Origin: Klebsormidium nitens
Lineage: Eukaryota > Plantae > Klebsormidiophyceae
Direction of reading: 5' to 3'
Length of the DNA stretch: 58,902 bases
Assembly (NCBI GenBank): GCA_000708835.1
Contig: DF237495.1
Location: 1-58,902, forward strand
A program made the translations under genes and the position numbers. Positions 30,901-58,296 of this stretch are shown piece after piece. Below the pieces are notes generated by a model. That model had not been told where the DNA came from and did no database searches. It saw only the letters and a program-made list of their open reading frames with translations. Positions within the stretch are counted from its first letter, which is position 1, and each line of letters begins with the position of its first letter.

Positions 30901-31276
30901 GAATGACCTTATCCAGGTCCTCTGGCACCGCATACTTTTGGGTGAAAGGGGCCTCGGGGAGCGACGTTACAATACCTGACTCAGACTCCGCTTTCTTCGG
31001 AGGCGCGCTGGTGTCTTCCAGAGCAGTGGTGGCATTTGCGATCCCTTTTGATGTGCTCTTTTGGGGAGAAGTGGAAGCTTTACAGGTGACGGCCAGCTGT
31101 CTGCATGTTGAGGCGTTGTTCTTCTTTGGCAGAGAGCGATGTCGTGCTGAGCTCAGCGGTGCACAGTCTGGTCGGCTGCTGGAAACTCTTTGACTGCTCT
31201 CACCGAGGGCTGCATGAGCATTTAAGCTGGCAAGCTTTGAAGAGCCCAATGTGGGTGCTGAAAAGGCTGTAGCCAT
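27925..31276 (-). CDS. Caleosin / peroxygenase with a long N-terminal transit-peptide-like extension, 4 exons, about 353 aa
   Basis: Exons 31276-30760, 30121-29941, 29313-29231, 28205-27925 (1062 nt). Motifs: PRANN, TVLQQHVDFFD, EF-hand [69 protein letters not shown]. Confidence 0.92.
28206..29230 (-). other. GC-AG intron (caleosin intron 3)
   Basis: Donor AGAG|GCAAGT at 29230 and acceptor TTTGCAG| at 28206. Only this join gives the in-frame sequence KFDR-DGKGALTWDEL. Confidence 0.8.
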
Positions 31277-33244: not shown

Positions 33245-36200
33245 TCAAGTAAAGAAGCTGTCATACTCGACCCAACTGTGCACCAATCCCCTTTCACCTC
33301 CTTTCCTCTCCTGCATCAGTTCATCCAGGAACGCATCCGAGCTCTCCCTAGCTGGATTCACGGCGACCTTCACCGCACAAACGCCCCGCTTCTGGTCGCC
33401 GCCCGGCTTACTTGATGGGAAAAGGAGCCTTCCGATCCACTCCTTGCGGACGGCCCTCGCGTAAATCTCCTCTTCGTACGTCCGCCGGCACATGAGTCGG
33501 TAGACTGCCACGTGGCGCGTCTGCCCGGGGCGGACCACGCGGCCGATGAGCTGGCGGGAAACAAATGAGGAGAACCCAAGCGTAAATCCAAGCGTAGCCA
33601 TTGAAAAAGGTAAACACAACCGATTGTCTATCCGTGTTTAGGATTCTCAAAAGAGTTGCGCTAACTTGAGTAGTCCAAACGGATGACATATTGCCCCAGA
33701 AACATTGGTCGCAAGATGCTGCCGGTCAAAGCTTTGCAAAGGTATTCGGAGGACTCAGAGGACACCTGTCCTTAAGCTTCTCTCGACTACGAAGTCGAAG
33801 GAATCGCAGCGAACTTGACTGCAGTGCGGGTTTTCTAAAGGCCTCTCTGATCAAGGCAAGAAACCAATCACGACCCCCAATCGCTTGTAGCAAATGCTCC
33901 CAGGTTAGAGATTTGAAAATCGATATGAGTTTCCAAGTAGCCCACCTGCCGCGCCCGCATCGGGTTCCACAGGGGCGCCAGGATGACGACACGTGTCGCC
34001 CCAAAGAGCTCGATCCCCTCGTCACACGTGTCCACGGTCGCCAGCAGTACGACTGCCCGGCTCTGCGGATCGTTGAATCGGTCGCGCCTGAGAGGGGAAG
34101 TGCATACTCAGAACTTGCTTGTTCGAAATGTCAGGAGTCAAGATTGGTGACGGTTATAATCAAGCACAGCTGGGACGCTCGAAGAAACGGGCACGAGGTC
34201 TACCGATTTTTGCAACGGCTGCCAGTCTGGGAGCATCAGCAGGCGTTTCAGAACCGATTGGCTGACGTCATCTGATTCCTGTGGAAAACACAGAACTGGG
34301 TTGAACAGGCCAAGTCCGCTGCACTCTCGGTTCAGAAGACAAGGACTCATGAAGCGACACAACAAGCATTAAAATCAGACAACGTTAAGATATACGTTTG
34401 GTCCTGACGTCTTAGCATCGATACGTCAACACCCGAAGTCAGGCAACAAACGCATCATCTCATAGACAATCAAACTGGAAGCAGAAACCAATTCATTATG
34501 AAAGGCAAAGAAGGGCTGACCGGGAACCCACCTCTCTCGCCGAATGCTCTGACGGACGTTCCCGTCGATATAGAGTATCTCATCCCCGTCCATGTTCGAT
34601 TCGTCCAGCTCCCAACCGAACCGCCGCGCCAGCCCCCGGGCGATTGTTCGGAGCGGCTCCACGTTCTCGCCGAACACCAGGACCCGCTCGGTAGACCTCA
34701 CCCGGGCGACCAGCCGGCTGACGAAACGCGCCTTGCAGCTGTGCGCGTCGCTGACGTCAGCGGAGAGGGCCGCCAGGGAGCTGCGGATGGGGAGGAAAGG
34801 GAGCCGATTCCGCGCCGCGACCAGAAATGCACGAAGAAAGTGGTTCGTATTTCGGAGGGAGCGTAACGAAGTATATATCATCTATTTGTCGAGGTCTCGA
34901 GTTGGGACTGTGGTTTTAGAAACGCGGCGAACGACTCGACCTGGCAGATGGAAAACGGCGGAAAGGAAAGCTGCAAATCAAAGAGCTCTCAGTTGCGGAA
35001 GCGGGACTGATGAAAAATGTTCCTTTTGCAATCCGTTCACGAAGACAAGATCAATTGAACATCAATGAAATCACAGTGGCCGAAGCTCGATTGAATGGGG
35101 TTTGCGTAAAGCCAAGCTGGCTAGGCAGAAGTACATTGCTCACGCTTTCGATCTTGAAAGCTTGACAAACTTGTCCGCGTAGCGACTGGCGAAAGCGGCT
35201 GGGTGCGCCCAAATGAACCCCAACTCGCTTGCGAAGCGCAGGTGACTTTCCGTATGCCCTCCGTCGTTCTTGCCTTGTCGCTTTTTATCAATTTTCCGGT
35301 CTTTCCGTTTCCGTTTCCGTTTCGCGCCGCTTTTGGAAAGCCCACCGGCTTCATCCTCCCCTGAGTCCGACTCGCTATCCGTCTCCTTATCCAGGAGAAC
35401 GATTTCCGCTCCGGCCTCCTCTTCCGCCCGGAACGGTCCCCACAACGGAGCCCGGTTCGCCGGAACGAACGCGTTCATGTACTCGGCGTACAGCTCCTCC
35501 TGTTGTGACGTCATGTTGAGGCTGACGACCGTCTCCGTGTGCGCGAGCGCGCGCCCGTCAGGAGCGTCCGCGGCCGCCGGCCGCCGCTGGAGTATGGGCG
35601 CCATCAAAGCCCTTAAACCCCGCAAGAGGCGCTCCGCGCGCGCGCGCACGCGGGGCGTCACCGCGGGAGCGGCCGCGAGGAGTTCGACGAGCGGCTCTTC
35701 GAACTCCCTTACGAACGCTCGCCGAGCTTCCTGTTCCGTTGCTTCCGTTGCTTCCGCCGGCGGATCCTCGTCCTGGCTGGAGAGCGTGTCGGCCGCCCAC
35801 TGGAGCATGACGTCCGGCTGCGCGAAGTGGAGCAGGTTCCACACCTCGGTGAAAGAGTTGTTGTATGGAGTACCTGAGAAGTGACGTCAGAGGCAAGGGC
35901 ACACGTCAGGTAGTTTTTTGTTAGGCCAAATTGAACGGCAACGTTGCATTTGAACGGCACGCCGCGATCTCTCTGAATTGTCCGACTGATTGATTTCATG
36001 CTTTTCAGAATCATGTACATTTGGATGCAAAGTTTGCTGTTGCTGGTCACTTGGAGTGCGTCAGAAGAACCCAGCCCGGCAAGCATGTCTAGCGTTTTCA
36101 TATTTTCGTGCCCTCACTTTTGAGGAACCAAGATGACGATTGCTGGAACTCTTTCCTGTAGTGGACACAAAATTTACGATGGCAGCGCCTTGGAGGGCGC

Positions 36201-39200
36201 GACAGGGCTCGACAAGAGGTGCATCAACCCTTCAGGCAGATACTTTTAATCTGCCTTGCATCATCCCTTGAAGTACGACGAAAAAAATACGTTCCTCAAC
36301 ACATGCGCCGGTTTGCTACACCTAGTCGACGAGAAGAAAGACACTTCCAAACCCAAAGCAAAGGATGTTGGACAACAATCCAGCCCACCTGTGAACAGCA
36401 CCCTTCGTCGCATTCGCAGCCCCCGCAACAAGTCCTGGTACAACTGCCCGTCTTTGTTCCTGATATTATGCGCCTCGTCGAACAAAGCGACGTCCGGCGC
36501 CTCCAGCAGGTGCCACGTCAGCTGCGCGCGCAGGCGCGCGCTCCCCGCGCTCCGGCTACGGAGCAGCGCGCGCACAGTCTCGTAACTCGCGAGGAGCATT
36601 CCGTCTTTTTTCCCGGCCCACTCCTGGAGAATCTTTACCCGGTGCTTGAGGCTCCTCTCTGTTTCCGTCGTCCCCGGTACGTACCCCGGGCGATCCAAGC
36701 GGTACGTTTTGATTGACACCGGCTTTTGGTCGTCCCACACGTGGAGCACGGAGGCGGGGGCTAGTGTCATAATACGTCGGCGCTGCAGGAGTTGGAGCCA
36801 CCAGTACAATGCCCAGCCCTGTTAAGGATTGTTAGAATCTGTTGGAGTGATTTACGAGACATCAGAGCATTGAAATGAATGGTCAGGCCCCGTTTTGCGT
36901 CGCGCGTTAGCATAAAAAGATGGAAAACAAATCATCTTAACTCTCTACTCCTTAATGTGGTCCTGTTTCAAGCAGAAGAGGTCCCTTAATAAACCAGACC
37001 TAACGAACCCATCGTGTCTGAAACTTTGCATACAACGTGAAGGATCTAATCAAGGGGGACCCTCGTTGAGAAGAAATCGACATGAATCTTCGGACCAAGC
37101 TGATCGCAAAAGTCGAGGTCATGTTTCAACACGGTATTGGTGCTTTCCAATCTGCTCTCGATCACAACGAATAACAAACCTCGGACCCACCAGCTTTGTC
37201 TTCCCACTGCCCATCGCATGCGCCAGGACGCAACCCTTTCCGGCTTCCTCAACCTCCGCTTCCGACACCCCTCCCAAGCATCCCGCTTGGCTTCCCAGTC
37301 CGTCTACCGACCCCGTCAGAGCCCTCATCGCAAATTCAAACCCTTCCACTTGTGACCGGAAGGGTTTCCGCCGGGCGCCGAGCACCGCCCAGAACGCCGC
37401 TTCCGCGGCGGATCCGTGCTCCGCGACCAGCTCCGGCGGAGTCCGCCGTTCCGCCGCCCTCACAGCGGAAGTGTGCGACAGCGGACACTCCGGGATGTCC
37501 TCTAGAGTTACTCTCCTCTTTCTCCCCGGGCGCTTTCTCGACTCGTCCCATCCCCCCGGAGGGGGATCCCTTTCCGCCCACAGCTTCGGTAAGACCTTTC
37601 CCATCCAGTTTCTTTCCCAGCGGTGTGAATACGCCCGTGTGTCCAGGCGTTCATCCACGCACGCCCCGAGGAAGGCCCCGTTCACACCGCAGAAGCGGCC
37701 GTACTCGGGATCGATCTTCACACACGACTCGTCATGAGTGTGCCCTTTAGCAACTCCTTTCTTTTCTCCGTTCCGCTGTCGTTCCGCTTCCGTCACTTCC
37801 GCTTCCTGCCTCCGAAAAGCATCGAAGTCCTCCCAGACGCGCCGCAAGGCAGCATCTCCCGAGCTTTTTGCCTCCTCCGTCCGTTCCGTTCCGTTCGTGC
37901 CCTCCCGTTCCGCTGCGGACTTACTCCGTTCTTCCGGCGGCCGACCATCCTCAGCAGCCGTTCTCTGCGACCTCGCTTCCGTTAGAAACTCGTCGAACAG
38001 CGGACAGTCGCCGAATCCCACCCCGCTCGCGCCCACAAACTCCTTGTCCGCCACCGTCCCTCCGAAGAACACCGCGCTCTGCGCGCGCGCTCCCGCGGCC
38101 GGCTCGCGCGCGCCGCCGCGCATCTCCCCGCTCCGCTCCATCGCTCGTGCCATTCTCCTCCGGGTCTCCACAGCGGCGACACGACAGCTCCTCCTGGGCG
38201 CTGCAAGGTCGCCGGAAAGCCCCCTTTTACTGAAACCGTTTCCGCCGACTGGCCGACCGTTTCTCGTTTGTTCCTTTCTTCGCGCCTCCTCTCTGCTCTT
38301 CTTTCGAAGCTGCGCGGTCGACTCCAGCATCTCGTAGTGGCTTAGAATATCATCAAGCGTCGGTTCTGGAAAATTCGAGTTCCAACAAGGCTTTTGGCCT
38401 TTCGCATCGCTTTTTCGGTTGTCTGCCTCAGGGTTTGGGGGCTTGGGCTGACCGTCGGATGCGATGCCGACGGATTGTGGTCCTGACGCCGAAGCATTCT
38501 CGTCTCCTTCTGAGGCTGTTACCCACTCTCCCTCCGTTTTAGACGTGCTCTCGCCAGCCGCCACGTCATCGCACTTCCGCACTCGCGGCTTCTTCCCGCT
38601 GCCCACCTGACGGCTGACGTCAGACCCCCCTTCCGTGACGTCCGCCTCCTCATCCGCCGGATCCTCTTTCCAGCCTCCAAAATCTTCTCGTATGCTCCAG
38701 AGGCATTCGTACTTCCTGTTCTCTTGAATTTCAACCGGAGTCTCCTCAAGCGCTTTCTCTCCAGCCGTCAGCAAAAGAGGCGTTCGCCCCGGACTCTCCT
38801 CCCAACAGTCAGGCACCTCGAGCGCTGGTCCGCTGTTCCGCCGGAAGCAGCGTCTCTTTCCGCCGGAGCCGCTTGAAACTGTCCCCACCAGCTCGCCGGG
38901 GGGATCCCACGGCTGCCCGCTCGGGCCGTGCGCGCGCCTTTTCCGGCCCCGCCGCCGCGTTTCTTCGTAGCAAGGGTAGCACTCCGTCTTGGGACCGAAC
39001 GCGCTGCCGTACCAGACGGTACAAACCGCCCGGGCACAACGCCAGCAAGGGCCCCCCTGACTTCTCACAATCGCCCACTTACTTTTCGCACCTGACTTTT
39101 TACCGGACGTCTTTGGCTTCCGCGTGCTTATTACCCGGCTGATTTTGCTTTGGTTGGTTTCTGACCGGTCGGATTGCCCCGCTTTTACGTCTCTCGGTTC

Positions 39201-39755
39201 ACGTCTCGTAGGCAAACAGTCGAAACTGATCGCCGAAGCTGACGCTTTCAGGGCCTCTAACTCTTTGTTCCTCTTCTCGGCGGAACGCTCCGCTCTTGAT
39301 GCACTCTCGCCAGGTAAGTCTGAATAGAACGTTTCAGAATTGGTACTCGAAGAGCGCTTCCGCGCCGCCTGCGAAGATTCGGATTCTAGAAGCATTCCTC
39401 CTGCCTCTTCGATGGTCAGCGTCTCGAACCCGCCTTCGCCTCTCCACGCGCAGCTTGGTAATGAGACCGCCGATTTAGCTGCTCTTCCGTTCCTAAAGTG
39501 ACCGGAAGAAGAAAGAGCGGGAACCTCAGACCGGAATCCCTCCCGACTTCTCTCATCCTTACAGAGTGATCCCCCGCTTTCCTTATCGGAAAGAGCAAGT
39601 GGGTAGAACTTGGAGGAACCGGTTCTCATGACGTCAGCGCCGCCCACGTGCCCGTTTGGGATGCCCATGTGGGCTCCCATCAGCTCTCTGTCGTCCAGGA
39701 CTAGAAACGAGTCTCTTTCTCTGGGCGTGATTGAGAAGCGCATGTCGGCTTCCAT
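33245..39755 (-). CDS. CLSY/DRD1: SNF2-family chromatin remodeler of the CLSY/DRD1 type, with an N-terminal GATA-type zinc finger, 6 exons, about 1470 aa
   Basis: Exons 39755-37191, 36818-36389, 35873-35144, 34780-34532, 34087-33946, 33550-33245 (4422 nt, phases consistent; start codon uncertain). Motif I CVLAHAMGSGKT; Ia LAPASVLHVW; II LFDEAHNIRN; III LFTGTPYNN; ERVLVFGE; RFNDPQSRAVVLLATVDTCDEGIELFGATRVVILAPLWNP; VI QLIGRVVRPGQ. The FNDPxSxAxVLL..CxEGI.LxGA segment is typical of CLSY/DRD1 rather than of ATRX or RAD54 (from memory). Confidence 0.8.
38970..39047 (-). other. GATA-type C4 zinc finger coding segment within the SNF2 N-terminal exon
   Basis: CWRC-x18-CYPC (CWRCARAVCTVWYGSAFGPKTECYPC). 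The W and GPKT align with the plant GATA consensus CxxC..TPxWRxGPxGPKTLCNAC. Confidence 0.7.
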
Positions 39756-41680
39756 CGAGAACGCCTTCTGATGCACGTGACCAAATCTTGAAGCCAGTTT
39801 CGTTTTTTAGGAGCCACCTGCAAGGAACGGACCAGACAAGTTTAGTCTCTGATAGACTGCTGTGGTCTTAATCACAGTTCTTTCGAGTCCAAGCAACTTG
39901 AGAACAGATCCGGGCGGCCTGTGGATGAAAAAATCAAACAGTGGACAGCAAAGAGGGTTGTGTTTCGCAAGAGAACTCCATTCTCTCCAGAGCATAAGTT
40001 CGTCTTATCATATAAATAGGTTGAGACAGCCTCAAATGGTTCGAGCACGGAAAAAGCAAAATATGGAAGAATGATCTCTTTCCCTGGGCAAAAGCTGGCT
40101 GTAATTTGACTTCGAGCCGGGATTTTGCCGATCAATTGTAAGTGACGAGAAGCAGCCCACTCAAAAGGGATTGTCTTTAGAGCAAGCTTCCAGATTTTCG
40201 CAGCCTCAACGACCCCACAAAATCGAGCAATCAGAACAACCGTAATGACATCTTGCAGATTCATTATCAACAACTCACAAATTGCAGAAGGTCGACGTTT
40301 GTTTTCTAGGTTAATAGAAGTGGATATTCGCAGATTACTACGACCCGAGTTGAGTTTATCCGTCCGTAAAGGATTAAGTGCCCTCCACAACTGGTGCCCA
40401 CAAACTTCGAGAATCAAAGATTTAATCCGTTGTCTTAAAGTTCTCTGGAATGTTTCCTTCTTACCTGTGAGTTCCTTCAGGCAAGGAGAAACAAGTAGAG
40501 GCAACTCTTGCTGCTGGGCAGAGGCCTTGTCTCGAGAAGCAATCTCCCACCGCAACCCCAGGTGCAACAATGCAACTTGGCAAAGCTGTCCAGACTGTAG
40601 CAATAGAGGTATGTCGAAGCTGATGTTCAGGCTATGCCAGTTGCAAACACGCCCTGGTTTCCACTCTTCTAGTTTCGAAAACAGGGCATGCCTCTGAAGC
40701 AACCAGCTCCCAATCAGCGCACTGCAACTCAAGATAAAATCGCCCACCAGAGAATGGGCTTCAAGTCCCAAAGTTCAATGTACAGCTCAAGCGAAGGCCC
40801 AAAACGTAATGTTAGAAGACTACCTGAGGGGGAATGGCGCTTGGACGCTGTTGACACCTCAGCAGGTATCCTTGAAGTACTGCGATTCTCCTTGTTTTCA
40901 TTCCTGCTTGGAATTCGTCCCGTGCAACTTCGAGGTCCAAATTCTGGGTTACTTCGTGAGTTCCAGCATCTTACGAGGGTTTTAGTTGTCTAATCACATG
41001 CCTGAACGTCAATTGAACAGTCAAACCGTCTGGCCGACTAACCACATTTGCTGATCCAATCGGTCCCTCGAACTCGGTCGCCCTTTCGTCACTTCGTACG
41101 TCACAACACCGTGTCGCGGTCACGTCAAAGTCTGCACTGGGTTTCAAAGTGATTTTCGGAGCGCATGCAGCACAGTGTCTCAAGTCTAGTGCTTTGAAGC
41201 GGGGACCTACAAATTCTTTCAGTCGTATCAGTCCATTATTCAAAGAGTACTGAAGCAAGAAGTGGCTACTGCAGGACCAAGAGTCAACATTCCAAGAGCC
41301 AAAAGTTTTTTGGGAGGCTCCCTCGCAGGTCCCTGTGAGCAGAAGAGCCAAGGCTTTAGAGGATGCATTTGTTTTAGAGCTTACATATCTCTCGCAGGGG
41401 GTCTGTCCGCAGCTGCCCTCAATCTAAGAAGTGGCATCAAGCCTTCTTTTGACAGCAACTTAAGGCCCTTGCGGCGTTCTCATAACTTCATCGGACGAAA
41501 GCAAGCTGGAAGATTGCGGCGACTGGGTAGAAACTGAGTCAGAGCTAGAGAGCGCCTGATCTCTTGTGCTTTGAACACGCCAGAACACGCCAGCACAGAA
41601 AGATTGAAGAGTGATTGAAGTTAGAAAGTCTGAGCTTGTCGCAGTTTGATCTCCACGAAGCGCTCTGTGGATCATTCAGC

Positions 41681-47600: not shown

Positions 47601-50600
47601 TGATCGGGGGAGAGTTCGTGGAGATTGACCGGGAGGGGCAGCTTATGGTCTCAGTTGGCAGACCGGTCAGGGGAAGCGCGTGGCTGCAACCGGGGCCCCG
47701 GGGACTCGTCGCGGCGCTCGATCAGATGTGAGACGACTCCTCCTTTGCGTTTTTATTCATCCATTCTTCTTCGTGTTCATCAGAGTGAAGAAATCAGCTC
47801 TTAGAACGTCGCACAAGGATAAACCTATAGATGCTCACGCTTGCAGAACCCTTATGCCCCGGGTGCGTCACGAGAAGACGACGTAGACCGCACCTCTTTT
47901 TGGTGATTCCGCGTTCTGATACGCCACGGGAAGAACGTGTTACCATATTCTTGGAGTATGTCTTCTCATCGATCGTGCTCGGTAACTGTACTCGATTCCT
48001 AGCCAGTGTATTGCCTTTGACCTCTAAAGATGATAATCCTTAATCCCCGTCAAAAGAGTTTGCATAAAGAAGTGCCGCAGAAACGAAGGAGAAAGAAGCA
48101 TCGCATCAATGTAGAGACTTCCAATCTCCTTGCAGGTCAAAGGAAAACGCATTCACTCCTACAACCGGCCCCGTCTGCGGGCCGCGCGGCGCGGCCGCGG
48201 CCCTCGACGCGCTCCTCGCGCTCGCGCACAGCGTCATGGACGAGCGCGGCTTCAGCGTGGGCCTCGCTGACGTCACCTTCGCAGACGCCCTGAAAGCTGA
48301 CGTCAGGTGGGAGCTCTTTGAGGCCTTCCAGCGGGAGACGCGCGGCGCGGCCGCGAGGGCGATGGCGGTGCGGCCCAAGCAGGTTTTGGGGGCTTTTGGG
48401 AAGGGGCGGTCGCGGGAGGACGAGAATTGCGCGCCCGGACTGATGCTTGCGAGTCAGAGCAGCGCCAAAGCAGTGCAGACAATCTTCAAGGTAAAGTCTA
48501 CTTTTTGGGTTGGAAGGTGACGTTGCAGTTGCTTGGAAAGAAATCTAATTTCGTCAGCCGCTGACGCGGGAGATAATTAAGCTGAGTGACAGACCTTTGC
48601 GCACATCCGCTATGCTTTCCATACGAAGCACGGCTCTTACATTTCGTGCTTGCCCCGTGTGGAAGTATTGTGTAACACCCTCAGATAATGCCATTCTCTA
48701 ATTACCACCGTTCCCTGATTTCCTTACGCCTACACTATATGCTACTGCGAAGAACCCCAAAATCGGCTTCACGCATCAAAGAACCTGGTGATATCGACCT
48801 CTCCCATCCTACTAAAGCGCAACCTAAGCGTTCACCCGAATTCTCAGCTCCACTCGTCAGCTTTCACGACTCACAAATCACAGTGGGGAAACTACTGTTT
48901 TGTGACTCACAAATCAATGCTACCGGAACAACCTTCACTCACCGACCAATCACCGCTCCTCTGCCACGACTATTCCTTCAAGCTGGCCCATCTGCTTCTT
49001 GGTTCTACCTTTCAAATGCGTTCAGTCTTGACCTGGAAGTCGCCTTAAATGAATCCGCCTCTCAGAAAGTGTGCCGTCAGCAATACCTCAACTCCGCAGA
49101 TAAAACCTAAACAAAATCTCATGTCACTATCCAACCGCCGCTTTTTTGCCAGGACTATTCCTCAAGACTCGCCCGCCTTCTGCTCCCCGTTCTACCGCCG
49201 ACAAACGCGTTCAAGCGCATGCTGGACGCCGGATCGAAGGGGTCCCCCTCCGACCTGGTGCAGCTGTGCCTGGCGGTGGGCCTGCAGGGGCACCTGGGCT
49301 CGGGCGCATTCCCACTCGCGGTCAGACAGGAGCTGTACGGGGCCCACTTCTTTTCCGAAGACGAGTGAGAATGCGCTCACGACGGCTACTCTGATTCATT
49401 CTGGCTCCTGACTTCCAGAGTTTCTCCTTCCGGGTTACTATTGCCATCCGTGCTTTCGATGCTTTCGATGGCTGAAGTACAACTGTACCTGCGTTTGAGC
49501 TCTAGTTCACGTCTTCTTCTGGTAGATCTTCAGGTGACCCAGCGGAACTTACAGGCTGTCACGAGAGACCTGTCAACGTCGTTTGTCTTCTTGGATACCT
49601 AAGAAAGCGGTGGATCGACGCCCTTTCAATCGAATGCATCCGACGCTGGAATTGGAAAAGCCAAACCGAATCCGTTCAGTTAGGCAGATACTCGGCGGAC
49701 CATACAAACTCAGACGGCGCCAATCTCAAGGTCCAGCAGATGATGGCACTTCTCGTTCCTGCAATGCCACTGATTCGCCGTTTGATCCTCTTCCAGGTTC
49801 GGCTCGCGCCTCTCTGCTGACGACGCGGCCGCGCGCGACGCCAAAGCGCGCAACTGCTCCCTCGACCAGTATCGCGAGGCCGCGGAGCCGCGCGCGCGTC
49901 TGCAACTCCTGTACGCCCAAGCAAACTTAGGGCTCGTCCCCGTCGGCTTTGGCGGGGCCGTGCTCGCGCGAGCGCGCGAGCAAGAGCCCATGAGCGACGC
50001 GCTGCGCGCGTGCGGGTTTTGGTGCACCGCGCAGGCGGGCCGGGACAGGAACATCGCACACCACCTGCTGACCGCTCTTCCCCATGGAATTGTGAGTTCT
50101 GGGTTCCTCGCTTTTCTGATTGCGTTCTATAAGTGCCGAGCCTTACGATTCTTCATTGAATCTGACATGGCCGAAGTTGTGAACGTCGATTTATAGTACT
50201 TTTGTAAAGTGTGTCCCTTCATTTGCTTCTTCAACGCACCTTCAACGGTGCGCAGCTCTGAATATACCAATGCACCTCATGAGTGCTTGATAGTTTCTGC
50301 TGTCTTCTTCGGACAATTTATGAGCTACGGAACTTGAAAGTTCGCATCCCACATGGAAGCAGCATCGACTTCATCGAACACGTCAGTAGTGCTGTGGGTT
50401 CGGTCACCTCATTTGCTGCCCCGACCTGGAAACTTTATAATAGTCGCTTTCGAATCCTTACAAATCTGTTGGACCACGTAGATCCCACTGCATCGCTGTC
50501 TTTTTATTGAATTGCTCCAGATGGCCTCCGAAAAAGAAGCAGGTTTTGCGAGAATCCGGAATTTTAAGTTCCCCGTTTGTCTTTCGGTTTGAATTCAGCA

Positions 50601-53600
50601 TTCCGAGTCCTCTGCTATCCTCCTTATCAGGGCTCCGGTTTGAGAGCCCAAATGGCTGACGTCAAGCTGGCGTATGACGGCACGTGCCGCGACCTCTCGG
50701 GCACGATCCTCTACTTCAACAAAGAAGCGGAGGGGCCGAACGACGTCGACGCGACACGTGGCGCCCTGCAATTGGACCCAGAAGAGAGCGCGGGAAGCCT
50801 GGCGTCATACGCGCTCAGCGAGCCAATGTCGCAGCAGGCGTTGAAGTCGAAGCACCCGGGGCAATACGCCGGGGAAACACTGGACGCGCTCGAGGTGAGC
50901 TAAAGCTTTATCGCCGGGGAAACAGTGGACAAGTTCGAGATCTCCATAACCAAAACTCATAAATCCCGGCGGCGGGCTAAAGCCGGAAGCACTTGGATTT
51001 TGCCAAGGAAATAGGCTTACCAGATGGAGACTCTGTGAAGGCATCTCTTCGGATTCAAGGCCGATTTTAATCAACTGGAAGGATGTTCTGAACCCCGGAA
51101 GATTCTGAAGCTGAACGCTTCAGGTCATGATGACGTAGATCTTTCAATGGTATTATTCTTGTAGCACGGTAGCGTTTTGATGGAATCTTGACTGCTGTTT
51201 TGAGGTTGTGTTCAGTTGATTCTTCAGTCACCACGTGGCTTCAGCGCGCGCTCAAGGCTTTAAGGAACCCTCACCGCCGTCAAACAATCAAAGATGTGAG
51301 AGTATGATCCGACGAAGATCCCCGCTTACCGGCCTCGTGGTTGCCCAAACCTTGACAAAATTTACGGACGCCCAATGTGAAATTCAAACCCTTCAGCACC
51401 CATTCGCTGAAAGCGCGCCCTCCTTCTTTCTCAACAGCTGGCTCTGCAACTGAAGACACCGGGCTCCAAGTTCTGCCACGTCATCCTGCCGTTTGTACCC
51501 GAGGTGAAGACGGGAGAAGAAGGGGCAGCGACGCCAGAGATAACGTCAGCCCGTGAAATCACGTCCCGAGATCCCGCCACCAGGAAGTGTCACGCGCTCA
51601 TGGACAAGATCCGGCACGTGACGCTGAAAGACATCGCAGCGGCATGGGAGATCAGGTGAGCGGAATTACAGCAAATTCAGATGTTTCAATGAATCTCTTA
51701 AGCTGGAACTAGTGTGGAGACCACTATCTCTAGGATCTTTGAGAGGACCGTCTGAGGAAGCAGCGGTGGCGTGATCCATGCCTTTCTGAAAGAGGTCAGA
51801 TTTCGACGCCTTCATGCACGCACCGGTTGATTGAACCTAAAATGTAGTGATACATGGAGGCCTACTGAACGTTTGCTTGGTAAGTCAGGTCCCGTAGCAT
51901 GGTGTAAGTACCGAGCGAAGCGCGCTCTCAGTTACTCAAAACCAGTCAAATCTCGACTCGACGGAGAATCAGACACGTGTCACTGTTTGTTTCTTGCAGG
52001 TACGATCCCAAGACGGCGCAGCGTGCCTACGACCAGCGCTCCAACTTCATCCTTTCCATCGAGCTGACGAAGCAGGTAAGAAGACTAATCTATTTTCCCG
52101 CATTCGGCGTTGCTGGCTTAGCTCTCATATCTGCTCGAGCCGTCATCTTGTCAGTGGAGTTTACTATGACTAAACTTTCGCCAGATTATGTGACGGCAGA
52201 ACTTCGGTGCAACGAGTGCGCGGCTGGCGATCAACTCCCATCAAAAAGGATCATCTAGAGTACGTCCACTTCCCTGGAAAACGAGCCCAAAGTCATCCAT
52301 AACTTTGAGGCAGCGCAAACAAGCAAGTGAAAGCACATGAAAGCACCCTTCTCACGGCAAAGATGTTGTGCTAAATCACGCTTTGGAAACCCAGTCCCGC
52401 ATGTTACCTACTTTCGTGGTGCGTAATTCACTAAAGAATGAGCAACCCTTTTCACAGGCCATCTTCGACCACCATCTCTTCGACGCCGTGCGCACTCTGG
52501 ACCTGCCACGTGTCCTGGGCGACGCGCAGCCGGGCTTCCGCGCGCGCGTGTGGACTGAGGTCACGTGCCATAAACCCGAGGGCGGTGCCGAGTGCCCCGC
52601 GTGCGCGCAGATGGCGGCGGACCTGGCGGCCGAAGCGCGCCTGGCCGCGCGCGCAGAAAAGTGGGTTCATATTCGCATATAAGATTTCTATTCCCTGAAA
52701 GCTGACGCAGAGAGTATCGACTTCTCAATACATGCTGGAGTTTTGATCATTGCTAAAACAATGGTGGCCTTGTTGTCGTCCAAGCTACTCCTGCACTCTA
52801 AGAAAGTTGTTGTCGAAATCGACAAAGGCAATATTGCCCCTGAGCATCTGAGGATTGTAATCTAGGCCATCAGATTCAAGCGGGCTGTCAAACATCAGGA
52901 TGCCTTTCTGTTCTTTTTATAGCTTGCAGCGATGTTTAATGCTCTCAAAACATTAGAAACCAACCACGAAAGCTCTCAACATCTGCCCAACCGGGTCTGG
53001 ATGTCGAAAATGTCTCAAGATCTTGCCATTGGCTTCCCAACTTTTGTAGCCTACTTCCCTGATCTTGAGCCGTCCGATGCCTTCCTTTTCGTCGATCGAA
53101 CGGTTCACGATCAGGAACCATGAGGGGAGCTTTCGGACGCAACGGCAGGTTTGATGCAAAGAGCTGTAAGCTCCATCAAACTCAGCCTCTTTGCAGCTCC
53201 TCCGTTGACGGCAGCGGTTACGAAGAGGACCCGCCCTCCGTTTTCGACAGTACGGCTCGCAAGCTGCGGGGGATGAGCCGGCAGGCTCTGCGAGAATATG
53301 CGGCGGTACGAGGGACCCCTGAAGTCATCAGTGGTTCTTGCAGCAGCGCGTCTCTGATTACAAGGATCATCGATTGCTGCAAGTGAGCTTCTTCAGTCTG
53401 GTATGCTGTGCGTGCCTCTGTTTTTCCATCCCGTAGCGCGGCGCTTCTGACAGTGGTCTGATTGTTTCGTTTCCCGAAACAGAAAACTTTTGGTGATTGG
53501 TTGCGGGCAAAGTAAAGAGAAATCTAGAATGATTGTCACCAGATATTTTTGTTCAATTGACGTTCTTCATGTGAAGTTTCTTTCTGAACCAAGTGAATTC

Positions 53601-56600
53601 ACCAGCTTTGAATGCCACAGTCAATCAAGCACAGACGTGCAAGGCTCTTTAAGCTTCTCGACTTGCAAAAGCCCTGGCTGACCGATGGCGAGACGTCACA
53701 ACTTCGCCAATGAGACACAACATCAATTTCTCTCAAAAACCAGCTAATCTATGTTAGATGAAGTCAGATCCGTCTCTCGTCGCCAGCTTCAAGTACAGCG
53801 AAGATCCTTGACCTTTCTTCAAACCCCGATCAATTTTATTACGCCCACAAACGCCTCGAGATATTTGCTTCGACAGGATCCATTCGGAGGCGTTCTTCAT
53901 CGAAAACCATCAAGTGCACCTTTTAGCGGTGCTGGCAGACCACGAGATAGACCTGAGAGCCCCCAAGAAGTTTCCGGGGATCGCGGCGGGGGACGAGGCG
54001 GGCGTGCTGATGGGAGCGCAGAACGCGCGCATTCGCGAGGCGGAGGATTTCCTGCGGACCACGCTCAAAGGTGAGTGGAACAGCTTTAAATCGTTGTTCG
54101 ATCCAATCTGGTAAATGAGATGTTTTCAGATGGTGAGAACACAGGTAAGGCCCCTGCAGTAAGAGTAAGAATCCCTCTTTGTGGGTGTGTGTTAATTTTG
54201 GGATGGTCGGGAACCTCTGAATTTCGGTTGGGGTCGGTAGGAGAAACAGAGGTTGAGATACTATTTACATGGTTTTCAAGGATCGGTTAGGGCCAAACAG
54301 GGCTGACTAGCAAGGACTATTTTTTTTTCCCCACCTCTGGTACAGATGCAGCAGCTTAAGGGAGGTAGATTTAAAGACTCGAATGATAAAATAGACTAGA
54401 GTAGAAGCCTTGCTACTCCTCCTGATCCGCTCGGTACCATTCGGGAAGATCATCATGTCTCACCAAAAGCTCTCTCCTGAGGAAGACCATGTCAGAAGTC
54501 TCTGAGAATTCAAGGACGTCGGATCGAATGCATCAAATTCTGTGAATTTGCGAGGCAGTGTGTTGACTTAGTGGCACGAATCCACTTGCAACAAAGACGC
54601 GCTTCGTTCAGATCCGTTACACGGGCGATCTAAAAGATCCGACTCGTTTTTGTCCTTCACAATTTGCCAAGCTTACAAAGTCAGGTTTTGACTGCCACAT
54701 GGATTCTTGCCAACCTTTTCCGCCGTTTCCTCTTGCAGGTGATCCGATGGTTACGGACCTCAAGCCCACCTTCACCGAATACAACCTCCTCTTTCCCCGG
54801 CCCACTCCGGTAGAACCTTCCCCGGTCACTGCCTCCTCAGCCGAACCACCGCTCAGCACACCGGGGCGGTTAATCGGGGAGGTCACGCTGGAGGTGACGT
54901 TACGGCGCCCGACGGGCAAAGCGTTAAAAAGGTGGAAACCGGTGGCGCACGCGGCCGCGGCCGCGGGGGGTTTGGTCGACGCGGTTGACTGGAACCGGGC
55001 GGTCTTGAAGCACCCGGGGGATGTGGAGAAAGTATATGGGCTGGGAACGGCGGAAGCTATGGTCAAAAAGGTCGGGAATCTTTGGTCTTTAAATCTTTTT
55101 GTTATGTTTGTCTTCTACGGTTGTCTGAATACAGCTCTTCTTTCCAGAGTGCTGTAATGAGTCCGTTCAAAACTGCCACTCAGTCTCGATATGCACCAGA
55201 TGCTTCTACAAATACGTATGAGACTTACGCAGAGGACTGATAAAGGTTGACGACCGCAACGGTTTGAAATCGTATTCGAGCAGATTCGTTTCGAAAACGA
55301 ACATCCGCCAGACTTTCTCATTCAGCACCAAAATTTCAAACGAGGTTTCATCCTGCAAAATTTTCCACTCTAGTTTGATCAGCCCATCGAGTGCTGAATA
55401 ATCCACAGGACTATCCTATAAGCCTACGGTTCACAAATGAACCATAAAGATATGCCCAGCCTTCAGACGCGTGCGTAAGTTCATTAATCTCTGACCATTA
55501 CAGACGCCCTTCCCAGGACTTCGGTTGCAGCAAAAATAAAAACGACGATACACAAAAGATAGCAGCACCAAGACTCGTCGAGAATCTTATCCCAAACCTT
55601 TCCCAAGCTCGGCCGTCTCTTCATCATTTTCGCTTCGCTTCATTTGCTCCTCTTCTCCTTTGCAGACCGTGACGTCGCTTTACGCCGAGGCAAAGGCCCC
55701 CGTCTACGAGCAGCACATCAATCTGGTTGCGGCGTGTATGGCCAAATCTGGGAAGCTCCGTCCGTTCACGTCCGCCGCGCTGAACCAGTCGCTCGGCGCC
55801 GCGAGGCGGCGGACGGAAAAGCACCGCGCGGAAACCGCGCCCATGCGACGCGCGCACTACGGGGTGAGTGCTGACCTCCAGAGAGCAAACATAGACTTTC
55901 ATACGACGAAATTTGAGGGTCTAAACAAGGGGCACTTCGGTTCTGTGGAGCTTTCTATCCTGCTTGTATTTCGCTGGCGAGGTCTTGAGAACGCTTTCTT
56001 TGGCGAAGATGTGAAAACGCAATAGGAGATTTTGAATGCTGATAAGAATGAGCGTATGACGGGTCAGAGAATTCATTTGCGTTTACAGGGGTATTGCCTG
56101 ACAAGATCCTGCCCACTCCAAGCTTCACAGCCTTCTTGTAGGATTGGAAGCGATCCTCGGACTTCCATTTCTGATTGCAATGGTCTTCGAAACTGTCACG
56201 AGCATTGGCTTAGCCGTGACGTCGGGTCGTGGGACTCGTATTTGAGCGTCAGTCCTCATAAGCAGAGTCCGAAACGAACTTTCTCCTTCTGGACAACGAC
56301 AGCCGTCATACATACAGTCAGAGCTCAATCAGCCACTAAATCTGCCGTCACCTGCGTTTGCAGGGTGCCTTCTCGACTTTCCAGCAGGCCGCGCTCCGCG
56401 GCGGCACGGAAACGCTCGCGAGCGCGGTCAGCCTGAGCGCGTTCGGGCGGAACGTTCCGCTGGGCACCGGCGGAAAGTTCGACCTTTTGCTCGATTTGAC
56501 TCGATTCCCCCCGGCGACTGTGATTCCTGAGAGAACCTGGCTATGTGTAGAAATGCCGGATGCGTTTAGGGAAACGGAAGCAGCTAGGGCCTCCGGAGAG

Positions 56601-56630
56601 GAGAAGAGGTCGGAAATCAACGAAGTTTAG
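41681..56630 (+). CDS. NRPD1/NRPE1: Pol IV/V-like (NRPD1/NRPE1-type) DNA-directed RNA polymerase largest subunit, about 20 exons; contains a -1 frameshift at about 46190 (possible pseudogene or assembly error)
   Basis: Exons 41681-41752, 42515-42665, 43109-43227, 43738-43839, 44460-44639, 45231-45533, 46008-46712, 47208-47727, 48136-48490, 49153-49364, 49797-50091, 50631-50894, 51438-51655, 52000-52075, 52458-52660, 53197-53305, ~53930-54070 (acceptor and phase unresolved), 54739-55070, 55666-55863, 56364-56630. Motifs: FQILGPEEI; CPTC..CPGHFGH; LCFAC; ARPEWLLLTKLPIPPP; GKRVNH..VISPDP; INRYPSLH; GADFDGD; QDSLL; WTGPQL; AGSKG..LVQLCLAVGLQ; YDGTCR followed closely by AGSLASYALSEP (Pol IV/V-type deletion); KGDP; VDWNR..VYGL; GTGGKFDL. 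No YSPTSPS heptads. Confidence 0.85.
50868..50939 (+). repeat. Short tandem echo of the 3' end of polymerase exon 12 inside the following intron
   Basis: GCCGGGGAAACACTGGACGCGCTCGAG|GT (ending 50894) versus GCCGGGGAAACAGTGGACAAGTTCGAG (about 50913-50939). Confidence 0.75.
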
Positions 56631-57814
56631 GACTTCAGAGGAAAGAAGCATCGAAGATCGGTTTCCGAGACGATTAGAATCTAGGGGTCTATACCACTTG
56701 AAAGATTGTGTGCGGGAAGACTTTGACGCGATTCAGCCCAATTGCCGCGCCGGACCCAGCAAAAAGTCGCTGAAAGGGGACAATGCACTGGTACAGATCT
56801 TGTGCAGAGAACCATGCAGTGGGAGAGATTGGAGTGATTTTCGAAGGTGGTAGGCTTCTTTCTCCTTGCTCGATGACACGAAACCAATGTATCTCGGTCC
56901 ATAGTTTTCAAAAGTTAGCAACTTTTGAAGGACAAGAGTGGTCAGATTACGAGGCTCCTTGCCTGTGAGCCGCGTCCGTACAACAGCAAGCCTTCAGAAT
57001 TACTGGTTCCTCATCTGGAAAGAGAGCATGCAGTGGAGTAGTTTCAGCGCGAGAAGCGGTTAACTTCCGGCAGGGGATTCTTGTCGATAATCAGTGAGTG
57101 CTGCACTCCTGTTGCAATGACAACGAGCAGACGAGAACCTTGGAAGCGCTTGCTTGGTGAAGTATGCGGACCGGAGCTCTTGAACAATCATCCAAAAATA
57201 AAGCCGGGAGAATGAGTCTTATACATGTCCAAATATTAGTTCGTAACGACATTAGTTCCTAGTGGAAATCATATGGTTCTCAAGCGCGACGCTTGGAGGT
57301 GCTTCAACTGAATCTCCACGGACTCTCCAACGTGGTCACAGCCTTAATTATGTGTAATTGCTCTTGAAAAGCATCAATGCCGACATGATCGTACTGATCG
57401 ACAGGAGCCCATTTTAGGACCTGACAATTGCTTCACCATGCGCGGTCACATACAACATGAATGATCATGAAGCCTTGTCTCTAAAGGGGCTCGTATCCGG
57501 AGCCTGGGGATGGGTGGGGTTGCTTTGGTGATTAGGGTGGGTAATAATGGGATTGCATAAGATAGTTCTCAGAGAGTTGCCCAGGGCTTCTCGAATACAA
57601 ATCTCCTAGGAGACAAGGGAGTTTGCCACTACGATGGAAATTTGAGCTAGAGGGCCATCATTCAGAATCTGTCACCATGTGGCCCACGTGGGCAGGTAGC
57701 GTATCGGGGATCTGTAGGCTCGCTTCTGGATCAAGGCAATCAACCTCACTCTGACTCTTGCAGTCTCTTCGATTCGTCCTCGGCCAACGTTGGACTAGAT
57801 GAACTTCGGCATCG

Positions 57815-58296
57815 ATGACTCGGCTACGTATACGCATGTACGCAACTAACCATCTGTTCAACGGCATAAAACTCAACCACTCTCCTGCCGCCACGTGCCC
57901 CCCCTTTCCGCTTGGAAGGCTTTGCCTCCGCAACCTGGTCGCCCCAGGCTCGCCGGCTCCGGGAACCGCAAAAACGCTTCCGGAACTGAAAAAGCTCTGC
58001 ATGCAGTCACTGCGGTTCACGTATCAGTGGTTCACCACAGCGTTGCTGGGCGTGCCTCACCCGCTGCGTTCTTCACAGCGGTGTGTGTGTGCGGTAAGGA
58101 GTTGCCGGAGTGGATTGGGGCGGAGCATACGCTGTTCCCGAGGTGGAAAGCGCGCACGCTGACGCATGATGGCATCCGAGATGCGCGGTACTTCATCCTG
58201 CGACTCGGAGACTCGGGTGTTCAGCATCCGCCGGAAGGCGAGGGGCATCTTTCCGCTGAGAGACTGAGAGACGGAGGGGAGAGTGATGGATGCTGA
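57815..58296 (+). other. Exon-like GC-rich segment of unknown affiliation (may belong to a truncated neighbouring gene or to an unresolved polymerase 3' region)
   Basis: Two overlapping + ORFs (115 and 133 aa) with coding-like composition, and a good donor GCG|GTAAGG near 58093. No recognisable domain. Confidence 0.25.

What the first reader, a model, noticed from the sequence alone, without database searches (positions are those of the whole stretch)
33245..56630. Head-to-head CLSY/DRD1-like remodeler and Pol IV/V-like largest subunit: a candidate ancestral RdDM gene module
Seen: a CLSY/DRD1-type SNF2 gene (-, ATG 39755) and an NRPD1/NRPE1-type polymerase gene (+, ATG 41681) diverge from a spacer of about 1.9 kb, with no recognisable gene between them. 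Known: in angiosperms CLSY1-4 recruit Pol IV and DRD1 (DDR complex) is required for Pol V. To my recollection charophytes have been reported to encode a single Pol IV/V precursor and a single CLSY/DRD1 homologue, so the genes themselves may be known. I am not aware that their physical linkage has been described. Inference: if both are single-copy, chance adjacency among thousands of genes is very unlikely. That points to a co-regulated, co-inherited polymerase-plus-remodeler unit from the origin of RdDM, or to a locus retained, duplicated or decaying as a block.
Basis: partly seen in the sequence, partly recalled or inferred. Interest (0 to 1): 0.9.

Follow-up and report, generated by a model that had tools for sequence, protein, structure and literature searches.

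The report
Linked CLSY-like remodeler and silencing polymerase
In the alga Klebsormidium nitens a CLASSY-like chromatin remodeler gene and a fast-evolving, tail-less copy of the plant silencing-polymerase (Pol IV/V) largest subunit lie head-to-head; related algae keep this arrangement, but neither gene is single-copy, the polymerase copy is frameshifted in this strain, and liverworts lack the linkage.

Summary
The window is scaffold DF237495.1 of Klebsormidium nitens NIES-2285. SNF2 gene KFL_005460070 (minus strand, ATG 39755) and a multi-exon Rpb1-like gene (plus strand, ATG 41681) diverge from a 1,925-bp spacer that has no called gene, Pfam hit or Rfam hit.

Both family calls hold. The polymerase is sister to land-plant NRPD1/NRPE1 and shares their foot-domain deletion and DFDGD site. 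The remodeler's four best fold matches are Arabidopsis CLASSY1-4.

The "single-copy ancestral module" reading does not hold:
- K. nitens has an older SNF2 paralogue elsewhere, with no polymerase beside it.
- This polymerase has no AGO hooks and no DeCL tail, unlike the published K. nitens homologue. Earlier scan notes, unverified here, place a giant hook-bearing Pol IV/V gene on another scaffold.
- It carries a strain-specific 10-nt frameshifting deletion upstream of the active site and is almost untranscribed. dN/dS of 0.26 and intact copies in two relatives indicate recent function.

The head-to-head pair, with a downstream caleosin gene, recurs in metagenomic relatives. One keeps the full polymerase and one keeps only its first exon. 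Three liverwort NRPD1/NRPE1 loci have no SNF2 neighbour.

Verdict: a lineage-conserved linked pair, functional coupling unproven. The linkage appears undescribed.

The parts
33245..39755 (-). CLSY/DRD1-family SNF2 ATPase gene KFL_005460070 (P0001, 1,473 aa, 6 exons). Motif I GSGKT is at aa 849, DEAH at aa 969, TGTP at aa 998 and QLIGR at aa 1372.
   Evidence: Pfam SNF2-rel_dom and Helicase_C. Fold matches to CLASSY1-4.
37191..39755 (-). SNF2 exon 1 (aa 1-855). It is a long disordered N-terminus with one GATA-like C4 zinc finger (aa 232-270, about 38946-39062), the conserved RRSxRVAAVETRRRM motif, and helicase motif I at its end.
   Evidence: The zinc-finger Pfam hits are below threshold.
39756..41680 (.). 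Spacer of 1,925 bp between the two start codons. It holds no called gene, and no block is conserved with relatives.
41681..56630 (+). Pol IV/V-type (NRPD1/NRPE1-like) largest-subunit gene, multi-exon, annotated product 1,692 aa. It has no CTD heptads, no AGO hooks and no DeCL domain.
46190..46205 (+). Site of a K. nitens-specific 10-nt deletion in Rpb1 domain 2. Relatives read AETLSVPV(R/V)(I/V)TD here. The upstream frame runs into a stop at 46205, and the downstream conserved frame is shifted.
   Evidence: A DNA re-assembly is identical over 40500-46499, and an RNA-library contig crosses the site unspliced.
46691..46705 (+). Metal A site DFDGD, in the context GMGADFDGDT. It lies downstream of the frameshift.
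50607..50900 (+). One exon that joins the YDGTxR motif directly to the trigger-loop region (SLASYALSEP...SKHPGQYAG). This is the foot-domain deletion typical of NRPD1/NRPE1.
56358..56630 (+). Last conserved exon (domain H, ...GTGGKFDLLLD), followed by a tail of about 35 aa and a stop codon.
   Evidence: An intact counterpart with a similarly short tail is in relative L008.
27925..31276 (-). Caleosin gene downstream of the SNF2 gene. It belongs to the same conserved syntenic block.

Best explanation
This is a real divergent gene pair, conserved within the lineage. One partner is a CLASSY-type (CLSY/DRD1-family) SNF2 remodeler. The other is a second, fast-evolving, CTD-less paralogue of the Pol IV/V largest subunit. 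The pair sits in a larger conserved block: caleosin, SNF2, polymerase.

Shown here:
- both family assignments;
- the arrangement in K. nitens and in at least three related loci;
- long-term purifying selection on the polymerase;
- a fresh 10-nt frameshift upstream of the active site in the reference strain;
- loss of the polymerase at one relative's locus while the remodeler stays intact.

Inferred, not shown: the two proteins worked together, the remodeler helping a non-coding polymerase onto chromatin as CLSY does for Pol IV and DRD1 for Pol V in Arabidopsis, and the shared 1.6-1.9 kb intergenic region co-regulated them.

The polymerase partner now looks dispensable and is decaying in several lineages. 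The pair is not the single ancestral RdDM polymerase plus remodeler.
For: Polymerase family:
- Rpb1 domains 1-5 occur in order and DFDGD is present.
- It is sister to a land-plant-only clade whose members carry DUF3223/DeCL (FastTree 98, IQ-TREE PMSF SH-aLRT 99).
- An AU test rejects a Pol II-like placement (p 0.015).
- It shares the foot deletion.

Remodeler family:
- Foldseek ranks 1-4 are CLASSY2, 3, 1 and 4 (E 2e-31 to 3e-29), ahead of ATRX at 5e-27.
- The best sequence hit outside Klebsormidium is a CHR35/DRD1 orthologue.

Conserved arrangement:
- L010 has the SNF2 exon on one strand, and polymerase exon 1 plus all 18 conserved blocks on the other, with a spacer of about 1.6-1.7 kb.
- L004 and L006 have polymerase exon 1 divergent from the SNF2 gene, with caleosin downstream.

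Selection: dN/dS is 0.26 at dS 0.49, the same upstream and downstream of the frameshift.

Frameshift: a 10-nt deletion relative to L002 and L010. It is present in the re-assembled DNA reads and in an RNA-library contig.

Independence of the partners: the SNF2 gene is intact in L004 and L006, although the polymerase is gone from L006/L007.
Against: - No co-expression or shared promoter is shown. Both genes account for only 5-9% of sampled words in RNA contigs of one study, and no RNA lies over the spacer or the 5' exons.
- The spacer has no conserved non-coding block. At 1.9 kb it is longer than classical bidirectional promoters.
- The caleosin adjacency is conserved just as well, so plain synteny could explain the retention.
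- The remodeler survives without the polymerase in L006/L007.
- A close relative has a CLSY-like ORF downstream of the polymerase on the same strand, so orientation may not be fixed.
- No tree including CLSY, ATRX and RAD54 could be built here. The Klebsormidium branches are very long in both trees.
- The existence of the second K. nitens Pol IV/V gene rests on earlier unverified notes, plus the mismatch with the published description.
Confidence: 0.55

Rival explanations
1. Neutral synteny. The two genes became neighbours by chance in an ancestor of Klebsormidiophyceae and stayed neighbours because the block has not been rearranged. The adjacency has no regulatory or functional meaning.
For: - The caleosin-SNF2 adjacency is conserved to the same depth.
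- The spacer has no conserved element.
- There is no evidence of co-expression.
- The SNF2 gene is retained intact where the polymerase is lost.
- Three liverwort NRPD1/NRPE1 loci have no SNF2 neighbour.
- Both families have other, unlinked copies.
Against: - Prior odds of adjacency between members of two small, functionally partnered families are about 5e-4 (my estimate).
- In a close relative a second CLSY-like ORF also lies next to the polymerase gene. Two chance juxtapositions would be odd.
Confidence: 0.3
2. This is the single ancestral Pol IV/V precursor and the single CLSY/DRD1 precursor, inherited as a co-regulated module from the origin of RdDM.
For: - Both family assignments hold.
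- The literature reports single CGA homologues of each family.
- The linkage is conserved among relatives.
Against: - The SNF2 paralogue P0004 predates the split from the relatives.
- This polymerase lacks the AGO hooks and DeCL domain described for the K. nitens homologue.
- Earlier notes report a giant hook-bearing Pol IV/V gene elsewhere in the genome.
- The polymerase here is frameshifted and nearly silent.
- The linkage is absent in liverworts.
Confidence: 0.08
3. The polymerase gene is an old dead pseudogene, and the pair is a meaningless relic.
For: - The frameshift lies before the active site.
- RNA signal is negligible.
- The stem branch is very long.
- The public representative search did not return the annotated protein for the catalytic exon. 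This suggests the annotated gene model skips that exon (inference).
Against: - dN/dS is 0.26, equal on both sides of the frameshift.
- All conserved blocks are intact and collinear in L002 and L010, and both read through the deletion site.
- DFDGD is kept.
Confidence: 0.07

Closest known systems
NRPD1/NRPE1 of land plants and the charophyte 'NRPD/E1' precursors (Luo and Hall 2007; Chakraborty et al. 2024, PMC11194755)
   Same: Rpb1 domains 1-5, a DFDGD metal A site in a non-canonical context, deletion of the foot domain before the trigger loop, no heptad CTD, a high substitution rate, and a position sister to land-plant NRPD1+NRPE1.
   Different: - It has no DeCL/DUF3223 domain and no GW/WG hooks. 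The ORF ends about 35 aa after domain H, both here and in a relative.
- It has CESC where NRPD1 has C[KR]YC (direct reading; alignment position not checked).
- It carries a 10-nt frameshift in the reference strain.
- It is probably not the K. nitens gene described in the paper.
Arabidopsis CLASSY1-4 and DRD1/CHR35 (the DRD1 subfamily of Rad54-like SNF2 ATPases)
   Same: A complete SNF2 ATPase core. The best fold matches are CLASSY1-4 across the whole 684-aa region, and the best outside sequence hit is CHR35. The protein also has a long non-conserved N-terminus.
   Different: - Identity is only 21-27%.
- Klebsormidium copies carry 1-4 GATA-like C4 zinc fingers in the N-terminus. I did not check these against CLSY or DRD1.
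- The gene is duplicated within the lineage (P0001 and P0004).
- Interaction with a polymerase is untested.
Conserved divergent (head-to-head) gene pairs encoding interacting proteins, such as histone gene pairs
   Same: Opposite strands, start codons 1.6-1.9 kb apart, and an arrangement kept across diverged relatives.
   Different: The spacer is longer than the usual limit of 1 kb or less. No shared promoter, conserved motif or co-expression is shown.

Membership tests
Pol IV/V largest subunit (NRPD1/NRPE1 family) | Rpb1 domains in canonical order, with a DFDGD metal A site | tested here: met
   Pfam Rpb1_1 to Rpb1_5 hit successive plus-strand exons and the annotated product. GADFDGD is at 46691-46705.
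Pol IV/V largest subunit (NRPD1/NRPE1 family) | Phylogenetic position with NRPD1/NRPE1, outside Pol I, II and III | tested here: met
   It is sister to a land-plant clade (Riccia, Calypogeia, Adiantum) whose members carry DUF3223, with support 98 and 99. An AU test rejects a Pol II-like grouping, p 0.015. Caveats: the stem branch is long (2.3 changes per column), and no labelled plant NRPB1 was in the set.
Pol IV/V largest subunit (NRPD1/NRPE1 family) | Deletion of the foot domain (about 190 aa) just upstream of the trigger loop | tested here: met
   Exon 50607-50900 aligns as a single HSP to P0138, P0073 and P0077. In Pol II-like and Pol III-like references the same two motifs lie 110-150 aa apart.
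Pol IV/V largest subunit (NRPD1/NRPE1 family) | C-terminal DeCL (DUF3223) domain | tested here: not met
   No Pfam hit in any ORF of 56340-58902. The frame stops at 56630. The relative L008 also stops shortly after domain H. The scaffold ends 2.3 kb downstream, so a distant extra exon cannot be excluded.
NRPE1 (Pol V) specifically | GW/WG Argonaute hooks in the CTD | tested here: not met
   The frames after domain H contain 0-2 WG/GW motifs. Riccia NRPE1-type P0049 has 22.
NRPD1 (Pol IV) specifically | C[KR]YC / CYC-YPMF CLSY-docking motif in the clamp head | tested here: inconclusive
   Exon 44457-44669 reads ILCESCGASF. There is no CKYC or YPMF, but I did not align it to NRPD1. Chakraborty et al. 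report the motif as absent from CGA homologues.
Pol IV/V largest subunit (NRPD1/NRPE1 family) | Intact, expressed gene | tested here: not met
   A 10-nt deletion shifts the frame before the active site and is confirmed in re-assembled DNA. The only RNA signal is three contigs of about 200-260 nt, at a depth of about 2.
CLSY/DRD1 subfamily of SNF2 ATPases | Complete SNF2 N-lobe and helicase C-lobe with motifs I-VI | tested here: met
   Pfam PF00176 and PF00271. GSGKT, DEAH, TGTP and QLIGR are present. AlphaFold2 model pLDDT is 74.
CLSY/DRD1 subfamily of SNF2 ATPases | Closer to CLSY/DRD1 than to ATRX, ARIP4 or RAD54 | tested here: inconclusive
   For:
- Foldseek ranks 1-4 are CLASSY1-4.
- The top outside sequence hit is CHR35 (107 bits), against ATRX 83 bits and RAD54 82 bits in the PDB.
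- It groups with DRD1 against ERCC6, CHD and bacterial SNF2.

Against: margins are modest, DRD1 itself ranks ninth in Foldseek, and no tree containing CLSY, ATRX and RAD54 could be built with the sequences available.

The published tree places a K. nitens homologue in this family, but its gene identifier is not given.
CLSY/DRD1 subfamily of SNF2 ATPases | Physical or functional association with Pol IV or Pol V | not testable with these tools
   Needs co-IP, genetics or complex modelling.
Co-regulated bidirectional gene pair | Divergent orientation with a short shared intergenic region | tested here: met
   The start codons are 1,925 bp apart and no gene lies between them. The distance is about 1.6-1.7 kb in L010. 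Both are longer than the common 1-kb criterion.
Co-regulated bidirectional gene pair | Correlated expression or a shared promoter element | tested here: inconclusive
   Both genes are barely represented in RNA contigs, and only in one study. No RNA lies over the 5' ends. The spacer has no conserved block.
Ancestral RdDM gene module | Linkage conserved beyond Klebsormidiophyceae | tested here: not met
   Riccia fluitans P0049 and P0073 and Calypogeia fissa P0138 have no SNF2 gene or tblastn hit within 10 kb on either side. Other charophyte classes could not be examined.

The most novel reading that the evidence does not exclude
Klebsormidiophyceae independently evolved a two-polymerase, two-remodeler silencing system. 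One polymerase would be a giant hook-bearing Pol V-like enzyme. The other would be a CTD-less Pol IV-like enzyme that is genetically linked, head-to-head, to its own CLASSY-like remodeler. This would parallel the land-plant split into Pol IV-CLSY and Pol V-DRD1, and would contradict the current 'single specialised polymerase, single CLSY/DRD1' picture for charophytes.
Probability: 0.2. Interest if true: 0.8.

Novelty: new variant of a known kind. Interest (0 to 1): 0.55.

Why it matters
The current model (Chakraborty et al. 2024) holds that streptophyte algae have one Pol IV/V-like largest subunit and one CLSY/DRD1-like remodeler, and that both families split only in land plants. This locus suggests Klebsormidium has at least two CLSY/DRD1-like genes. 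Together with earlier scan notes, it also suggests two Pol IV/V-like largest subunits.

One remodeler-polymerase pair is physically linked across diverged relatives. Genomic linkage of partners that interact in Arabidopsis (CLSY with Pol IV, DRD1 with Pol V) is a testable hint that the partnership predates land plants.

The natural variation helps. The polymerase is frameshifted in NIES-2285, intact in two relatives and lost in another, so comparative material exists for asking what such an enzyme does in an alga.

The finding also warns that the reference gene model for this polymerase is unreliable around the active site.

Tried and rejected
- Searching single exons against the PDB gave no clear subfamily call. 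NRPD1 was only marginally ahead of RPC1 for the catalytic exon, and ATRX or INO80 led for the SNF2 exons.
- The representative-library search with the catalytic exon did not return the annotated K. nitens protein. I could therefore not obtain the official 1,692-aa sequence or see how its model passes the frameshift.
- The word-indexed protein search returned only DRD1 orthologues, not CLSY, ATRX or RAD54. No decisive SNF2 tree was possible, so I used Foldseek ranking instead.
- I first read a 13-nt deletion in L002's domain-H exon as a second independent frameshift. The full contig shows a tandem duplicate with an intact second copy, and I dropped that reading.
- I looked for inverted repeats at the scaffold end that would mirror the downstream CLSY-like ORF seen in L008, and found none.
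- The supplementary tables of the key paper are not held, so the gene identifiers used there are unknown.
- GATA zinc-finger assignment for the SNF2 N-terminus stays below the Pfam thresholds.
- One look-up of encoding contigs failed because I trimmed the wrong end of a minus-strand ORF. The corrected look-up is.
Full report
**Identity of the window and check of the observation**

The window is the complete 58,902-nt scaffold DF237495.1 of Klebsormidium nitens NIES-2285, GCA_000708835.1. On the minus strand lies SNF2 gene KFL_005460070 (P0001, 1,473 aa). Its exon 1 is 39755-37191, five further exons run down to the stop at 33245, and helicase motifs I-VI are all present.

On the plus strand, starting at 41681, the annotation calls a 1,692-aa product that hits Pfam Rpb1 domains 1-5. 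My own exon scan finds those domains in order. The last conserved domain (H...GTGGKFDLLLD) ends at about 56525, and the frame stops at 56630.

The spacer is 1,925 bp. It holds no called gene, its one long ORF has no Pfam hit, it has no Rfam match, and no RNA contig lies over it.

**The polymerase**

The catalytic exon carries GADFDGD (46691-46705). In the PDB its best match is Arabidopsis NRPD1, but only marginally ahead of RPC1.

I built a conceptual protein from 18 blocks conserved with an orthologous contig from a close relative (L002, a Logan assembly; 75-89% aa identity per block). In trees with 34-84 largest subunits from the representative search, the Klebsormidium pair is sister to a clade made only of land-plant proteins: Riccia fluitans P0049, P0103 and P0073, Calypogeia fissa P0138 and Adiantum P0077. 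Support is FastTree 98 and IQ-TREE PMSF SH-aLRT 99. P0049 and P0138 carry DUF3223/DeCL, and P0049 has 22 GW/WG motifs, so this is the NRPD1/NRPE1 clade. An AU test rejects grouping with the Pol II-like clade (p 0.015).

Independently of the tree, exon 50607-50900 joins the YDGTxR motif to the trigger-loop region with about 25 residues between them. It aligns as a single HSP to the NRPD1/NRPE1-clade proteins, whereas in Pol II-like and Pol III-like references the two motifs lie 110-150 aa apart. This is the foot-domain deletion that the literature treats as diagnostic.

Two caveats apply. The Klebsormidium stem branch is very long (2.3 changes per column), and no labelled plant NRPB1 was in the set.

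**What this polymerase lacks**

After domain H the ORF runs on for only about 35 codons before the stop. The remaining 2.3 kb of the scaffold holds no DUF3223 hit and almost no GW/WG motifs. The relative's contig has the same short tail.

Chakraborty et al. 2024 (PMC11194755) describe 'the' K. nitens NRPD/E1 homologue as having numerous AGO hooks and a predicted DeCL domain. Earlier notes of this scan describe a roughly 3,400-residue Pol IV/V-like gene with GW/WG hooks on another scaffold of this genome, and a silent, frameshifted RPB2 paralogue. I could not fetch those scaffolds, so I did not verify either note.

Even so, the gene here does not fit the published description (tested), and a second locus has been reported (not tested). 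Together these make it likely that this is a second Pol IV/V-like largest subunit and not the published one.

**The frameshift**

At 46192/46193 K. nitens lacks 10 nt that both the close relative and a more distant relative keep. L002 reads AETLSVPVRITDRNIEYW and L010 reads AETLSVPVVVTDRNIKLL. The upstream frame, which encodes the conserved GKRV...SVISPDP...GVPVEIAETL stretch, then stops at 46205. The downstream conserved sequence, including DFDGD, continues in another frame.

A Logan re-assembly of DNA reads matches 40500-46499 with no difference. That sample may be the same one the genome was assembled from. A 205-nt contig from an RNA library crosses the site unspliced, at a depth of about 2, and could be pre-mRNA or DNA carry-over. 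No other RNA signal lies on the 5' 4 kb of the gene.

The representative-library search with this exon did not return the annotated protein. This suggests, by inference only, that the official model splices around the catalytic exon.

Against old pseudogenisation, dN/dS versus L002 is 0.26 over 1,487 codons (dS 0.49). It is 0.25 upstream and 0.27 downstream of the lesion. The lesion is therefore recent or specific to this strain.

**The remodeler**

P0001's helicase region hits human ATRX (83 bits) and zebrafish RAD54 (82 bits) best in the PDB. This places it in the Rad54-like group.

In the large protein collection the only strong hits are itself, a K. nitens paralogue (P0004, 44-50% identity, annotated 'RAD54-like'), two metagenomic proteins, and then Kingdonia P0005 (107 bits, E 4e-25). 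P0005's 120 nearest relatives are CHROMATIN REMODELING 35, that is DRD1.

An AlphaFold2 model of residues 790-1473 (pLDDT 74), searched against Swiss-Prot AlphaFold models, gives Arabidopsis CLASSY2, 3, 1 and 4 as ranks 1-4 (E 2e-31 to 3e-29, full-length alignment). ATRX follows at 5e-27, then ARIP4, RAD54 and CHR35 at 1e-25.

I could not obtain CLSY, ATRX or RAD54 sequences for a tree. Membership of the CLSY/DRD1 subfamily therefore rests on these rankings and on the published tree. I rate it likely, not proven.

**Copy number of the remodeler**

P0004 sits on scaffold DF237598.1 between kinesin, Dna2 and two unknown genes, with no polymerase nearby and no polymerase exon by tblastn. In a helicase-domain tree the topology is (P0004,(P0001,(L004,L006))) with SH-aLRT 96. 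The duplication is therefore older than the split from the metagenomic relatives. The 'single CLSY/DRD1' statement does not hold for K. nitens.

**Conservation of the arrangement**

Long eukaryotic contigs from two JGI metagenomes carry positional orthologues. Their caleosin exons are 70-88% identical to K. nitens. Their polymerase blocks are 40-67% identical, and the SNF2 N-terminal region is 41-46% identical.

- L010 has the SNF2 first exon on one strand. About 1.6-1.7 kb away on the other strand it has polymerase exon 1, followed by all 18 conserved blocks in order.
- L004 has SNF2 followed by caleosin. Upstream and divergent lie polymerase exons 1 and 2, then a gag/zinc-knuckle retroelement, then the contig end.
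- L006/L007 has SNF2 followed by caleosin. Upstream and divergent lies only a remnant of polymerase exon 1, and no other polymerase exon appears in the next 17 kb.

The SNF2 gene is intact, with the same exon structure, in L004 and L006. The three contigs are about 77-87% identical to one another in the SNF2 region and its upstream flank, and they co-occur in the same samples. They may be three species or three paralogous blocks of one genome, and I cannot tell which.

In the close relative, the full contig (L008) shows a 547-aa ORF 2.7 kb downstream of the polymerase, on the same strand. It has the family-specific N-terminus: two C4 fingers and the RRSxRAAAVETRKRM motif. It is 79% identical in nucleotides to window 38014-38192 over 180 nt, and it runs off the contig end with an apparent frameshift. 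Either the polymerase is flanked by CLSY-like genes on both sides there, or its orientation differs.

**Depth of the linkage**

Three liverwort NRPD1/NRPE1 loci have no SNF2 gene and no tblastn hit within 10 kb on either side: Riccia P0049 (NRPE1-type), Riccia P0073, and Calypogeia P0138. From memory of the AGI codes, the Arabidopsis genes are also unlinked; I did not test this. I could not examine other charophyte classes. The linkage is therefore shown only within Klebsormidium-like algae.

**Regulation**

The spacer shows no block conserved with L010, L004 or L006. Both genes appear only as 5-9% of sampled words in RNA contigs of a single 2024 study, and not at all in about 20 other RNA runs. 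Co-regulation is neither supported nor refuted.

**Comparison with what is known, and novelty**

The two families and their presence in K. nitens are published (PMC11194755). Earlier surveys had missed the polymerase. No held paper mentions synteny or adjacency, or these gene identifiers.

New here:
- the conserved head-to-head linkage;
- a second, CTD-less and frameshifted Pol IV/V-like paralogue;
- an old CLSY-like duplication in K. nitens;
- repeated decay of the polymerase partner.

I class this as a new variant of a known kind. Interest is moderate (0.55). The single-copy 'origin of RdDM module' reading is not supported. The locus nevertheless challenges the one-polymerase, one-remodeler picture for charophytes and offers natural variants to test it.

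Noticed in passing
L008:3-1643 (minus strand of the Logan contig; 2.7 kb downstream of the polymerase gene, same transcriptional direction): A 547-aa ORF in the close relative has the CLSY-like N-terminal architecture: two C4 fingers and the RRSxRAAAVETRKRM motif. It is 79% identical in nucleotides to window 38014-38192 over 180 nt. It switches frame near the contig end and runs off it. It is either a second CLSY-like gene flanking the polymerase or evidence of an inversion.
   Followed up: partly
L002:13560-13704 and L008 about 4380-4660: The domain-H exon of the relative's polymerase is tandemly duplicated. The first copy has a 13-nt deletion and the second copy is intact.
   Followed up: partly
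L004:1385-3170 (minus strand): Retroelement gag-like ORFs with a CCHC zinc knuckle lie where the polymerase gene should continue after exon 2. The contig ends just beyond them.
   Followed up: no
L007:1-17460: In this relative only a 24-aa remnant of polymerase exon 1 survives upstream of an intact SNF2 gene. No other polymerase exon appears in 17 kb.
   Followed up: yes
L010:9300-10340: Part of the catalytic exon (RKGRRVQLSP...LQVGDVLER) occurs twice in tandem. The second copy continues into DFDGD, and an extra insert of about 30 aa lies before the active site.
   Followed up: no
window 38946-39062 (P0001 aa 232-270); P0004 aa 27-100; P0002 (L004): The number of GATA-like CxxC-X17-18-CxxC fingers in the remodeler N-terminus varies: 1 in P0001, 2 in P0004 and in the L008 ORF, and about 4 in P0002. 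Pfam GATA and DUF7685 hits are below threshold.
   Followed up: partly
window 46230-46470: A charged low-complexity insert rich in E, R and K, with an 18-nt tandem repeat at 46272-46308, lies inside Rpb1 domain 2 between the frameshift site and the active-site segment. It is also present in L002 but poorly conserved there.
   Followed up: no
window 23437-31276: The neighbouring annotated genes are caleosin (27925-31276, minus strand), DSS1/SEM1 (25617-26861, plus strand) and PSRP5-like (23437-24817, minus strand). The caleosin adjacency to the SNF2 gene is conserved in L004 and L006.
   Followed up: partly
window 46106-46879: The exhaustive representative search with this exon returned fragments from relatives (P0036, P0037, P0039) but not the annotated 1,692-aa K. 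nitens protein. This suggests the public gene model omits the catalytic exon.
   Followed up: no
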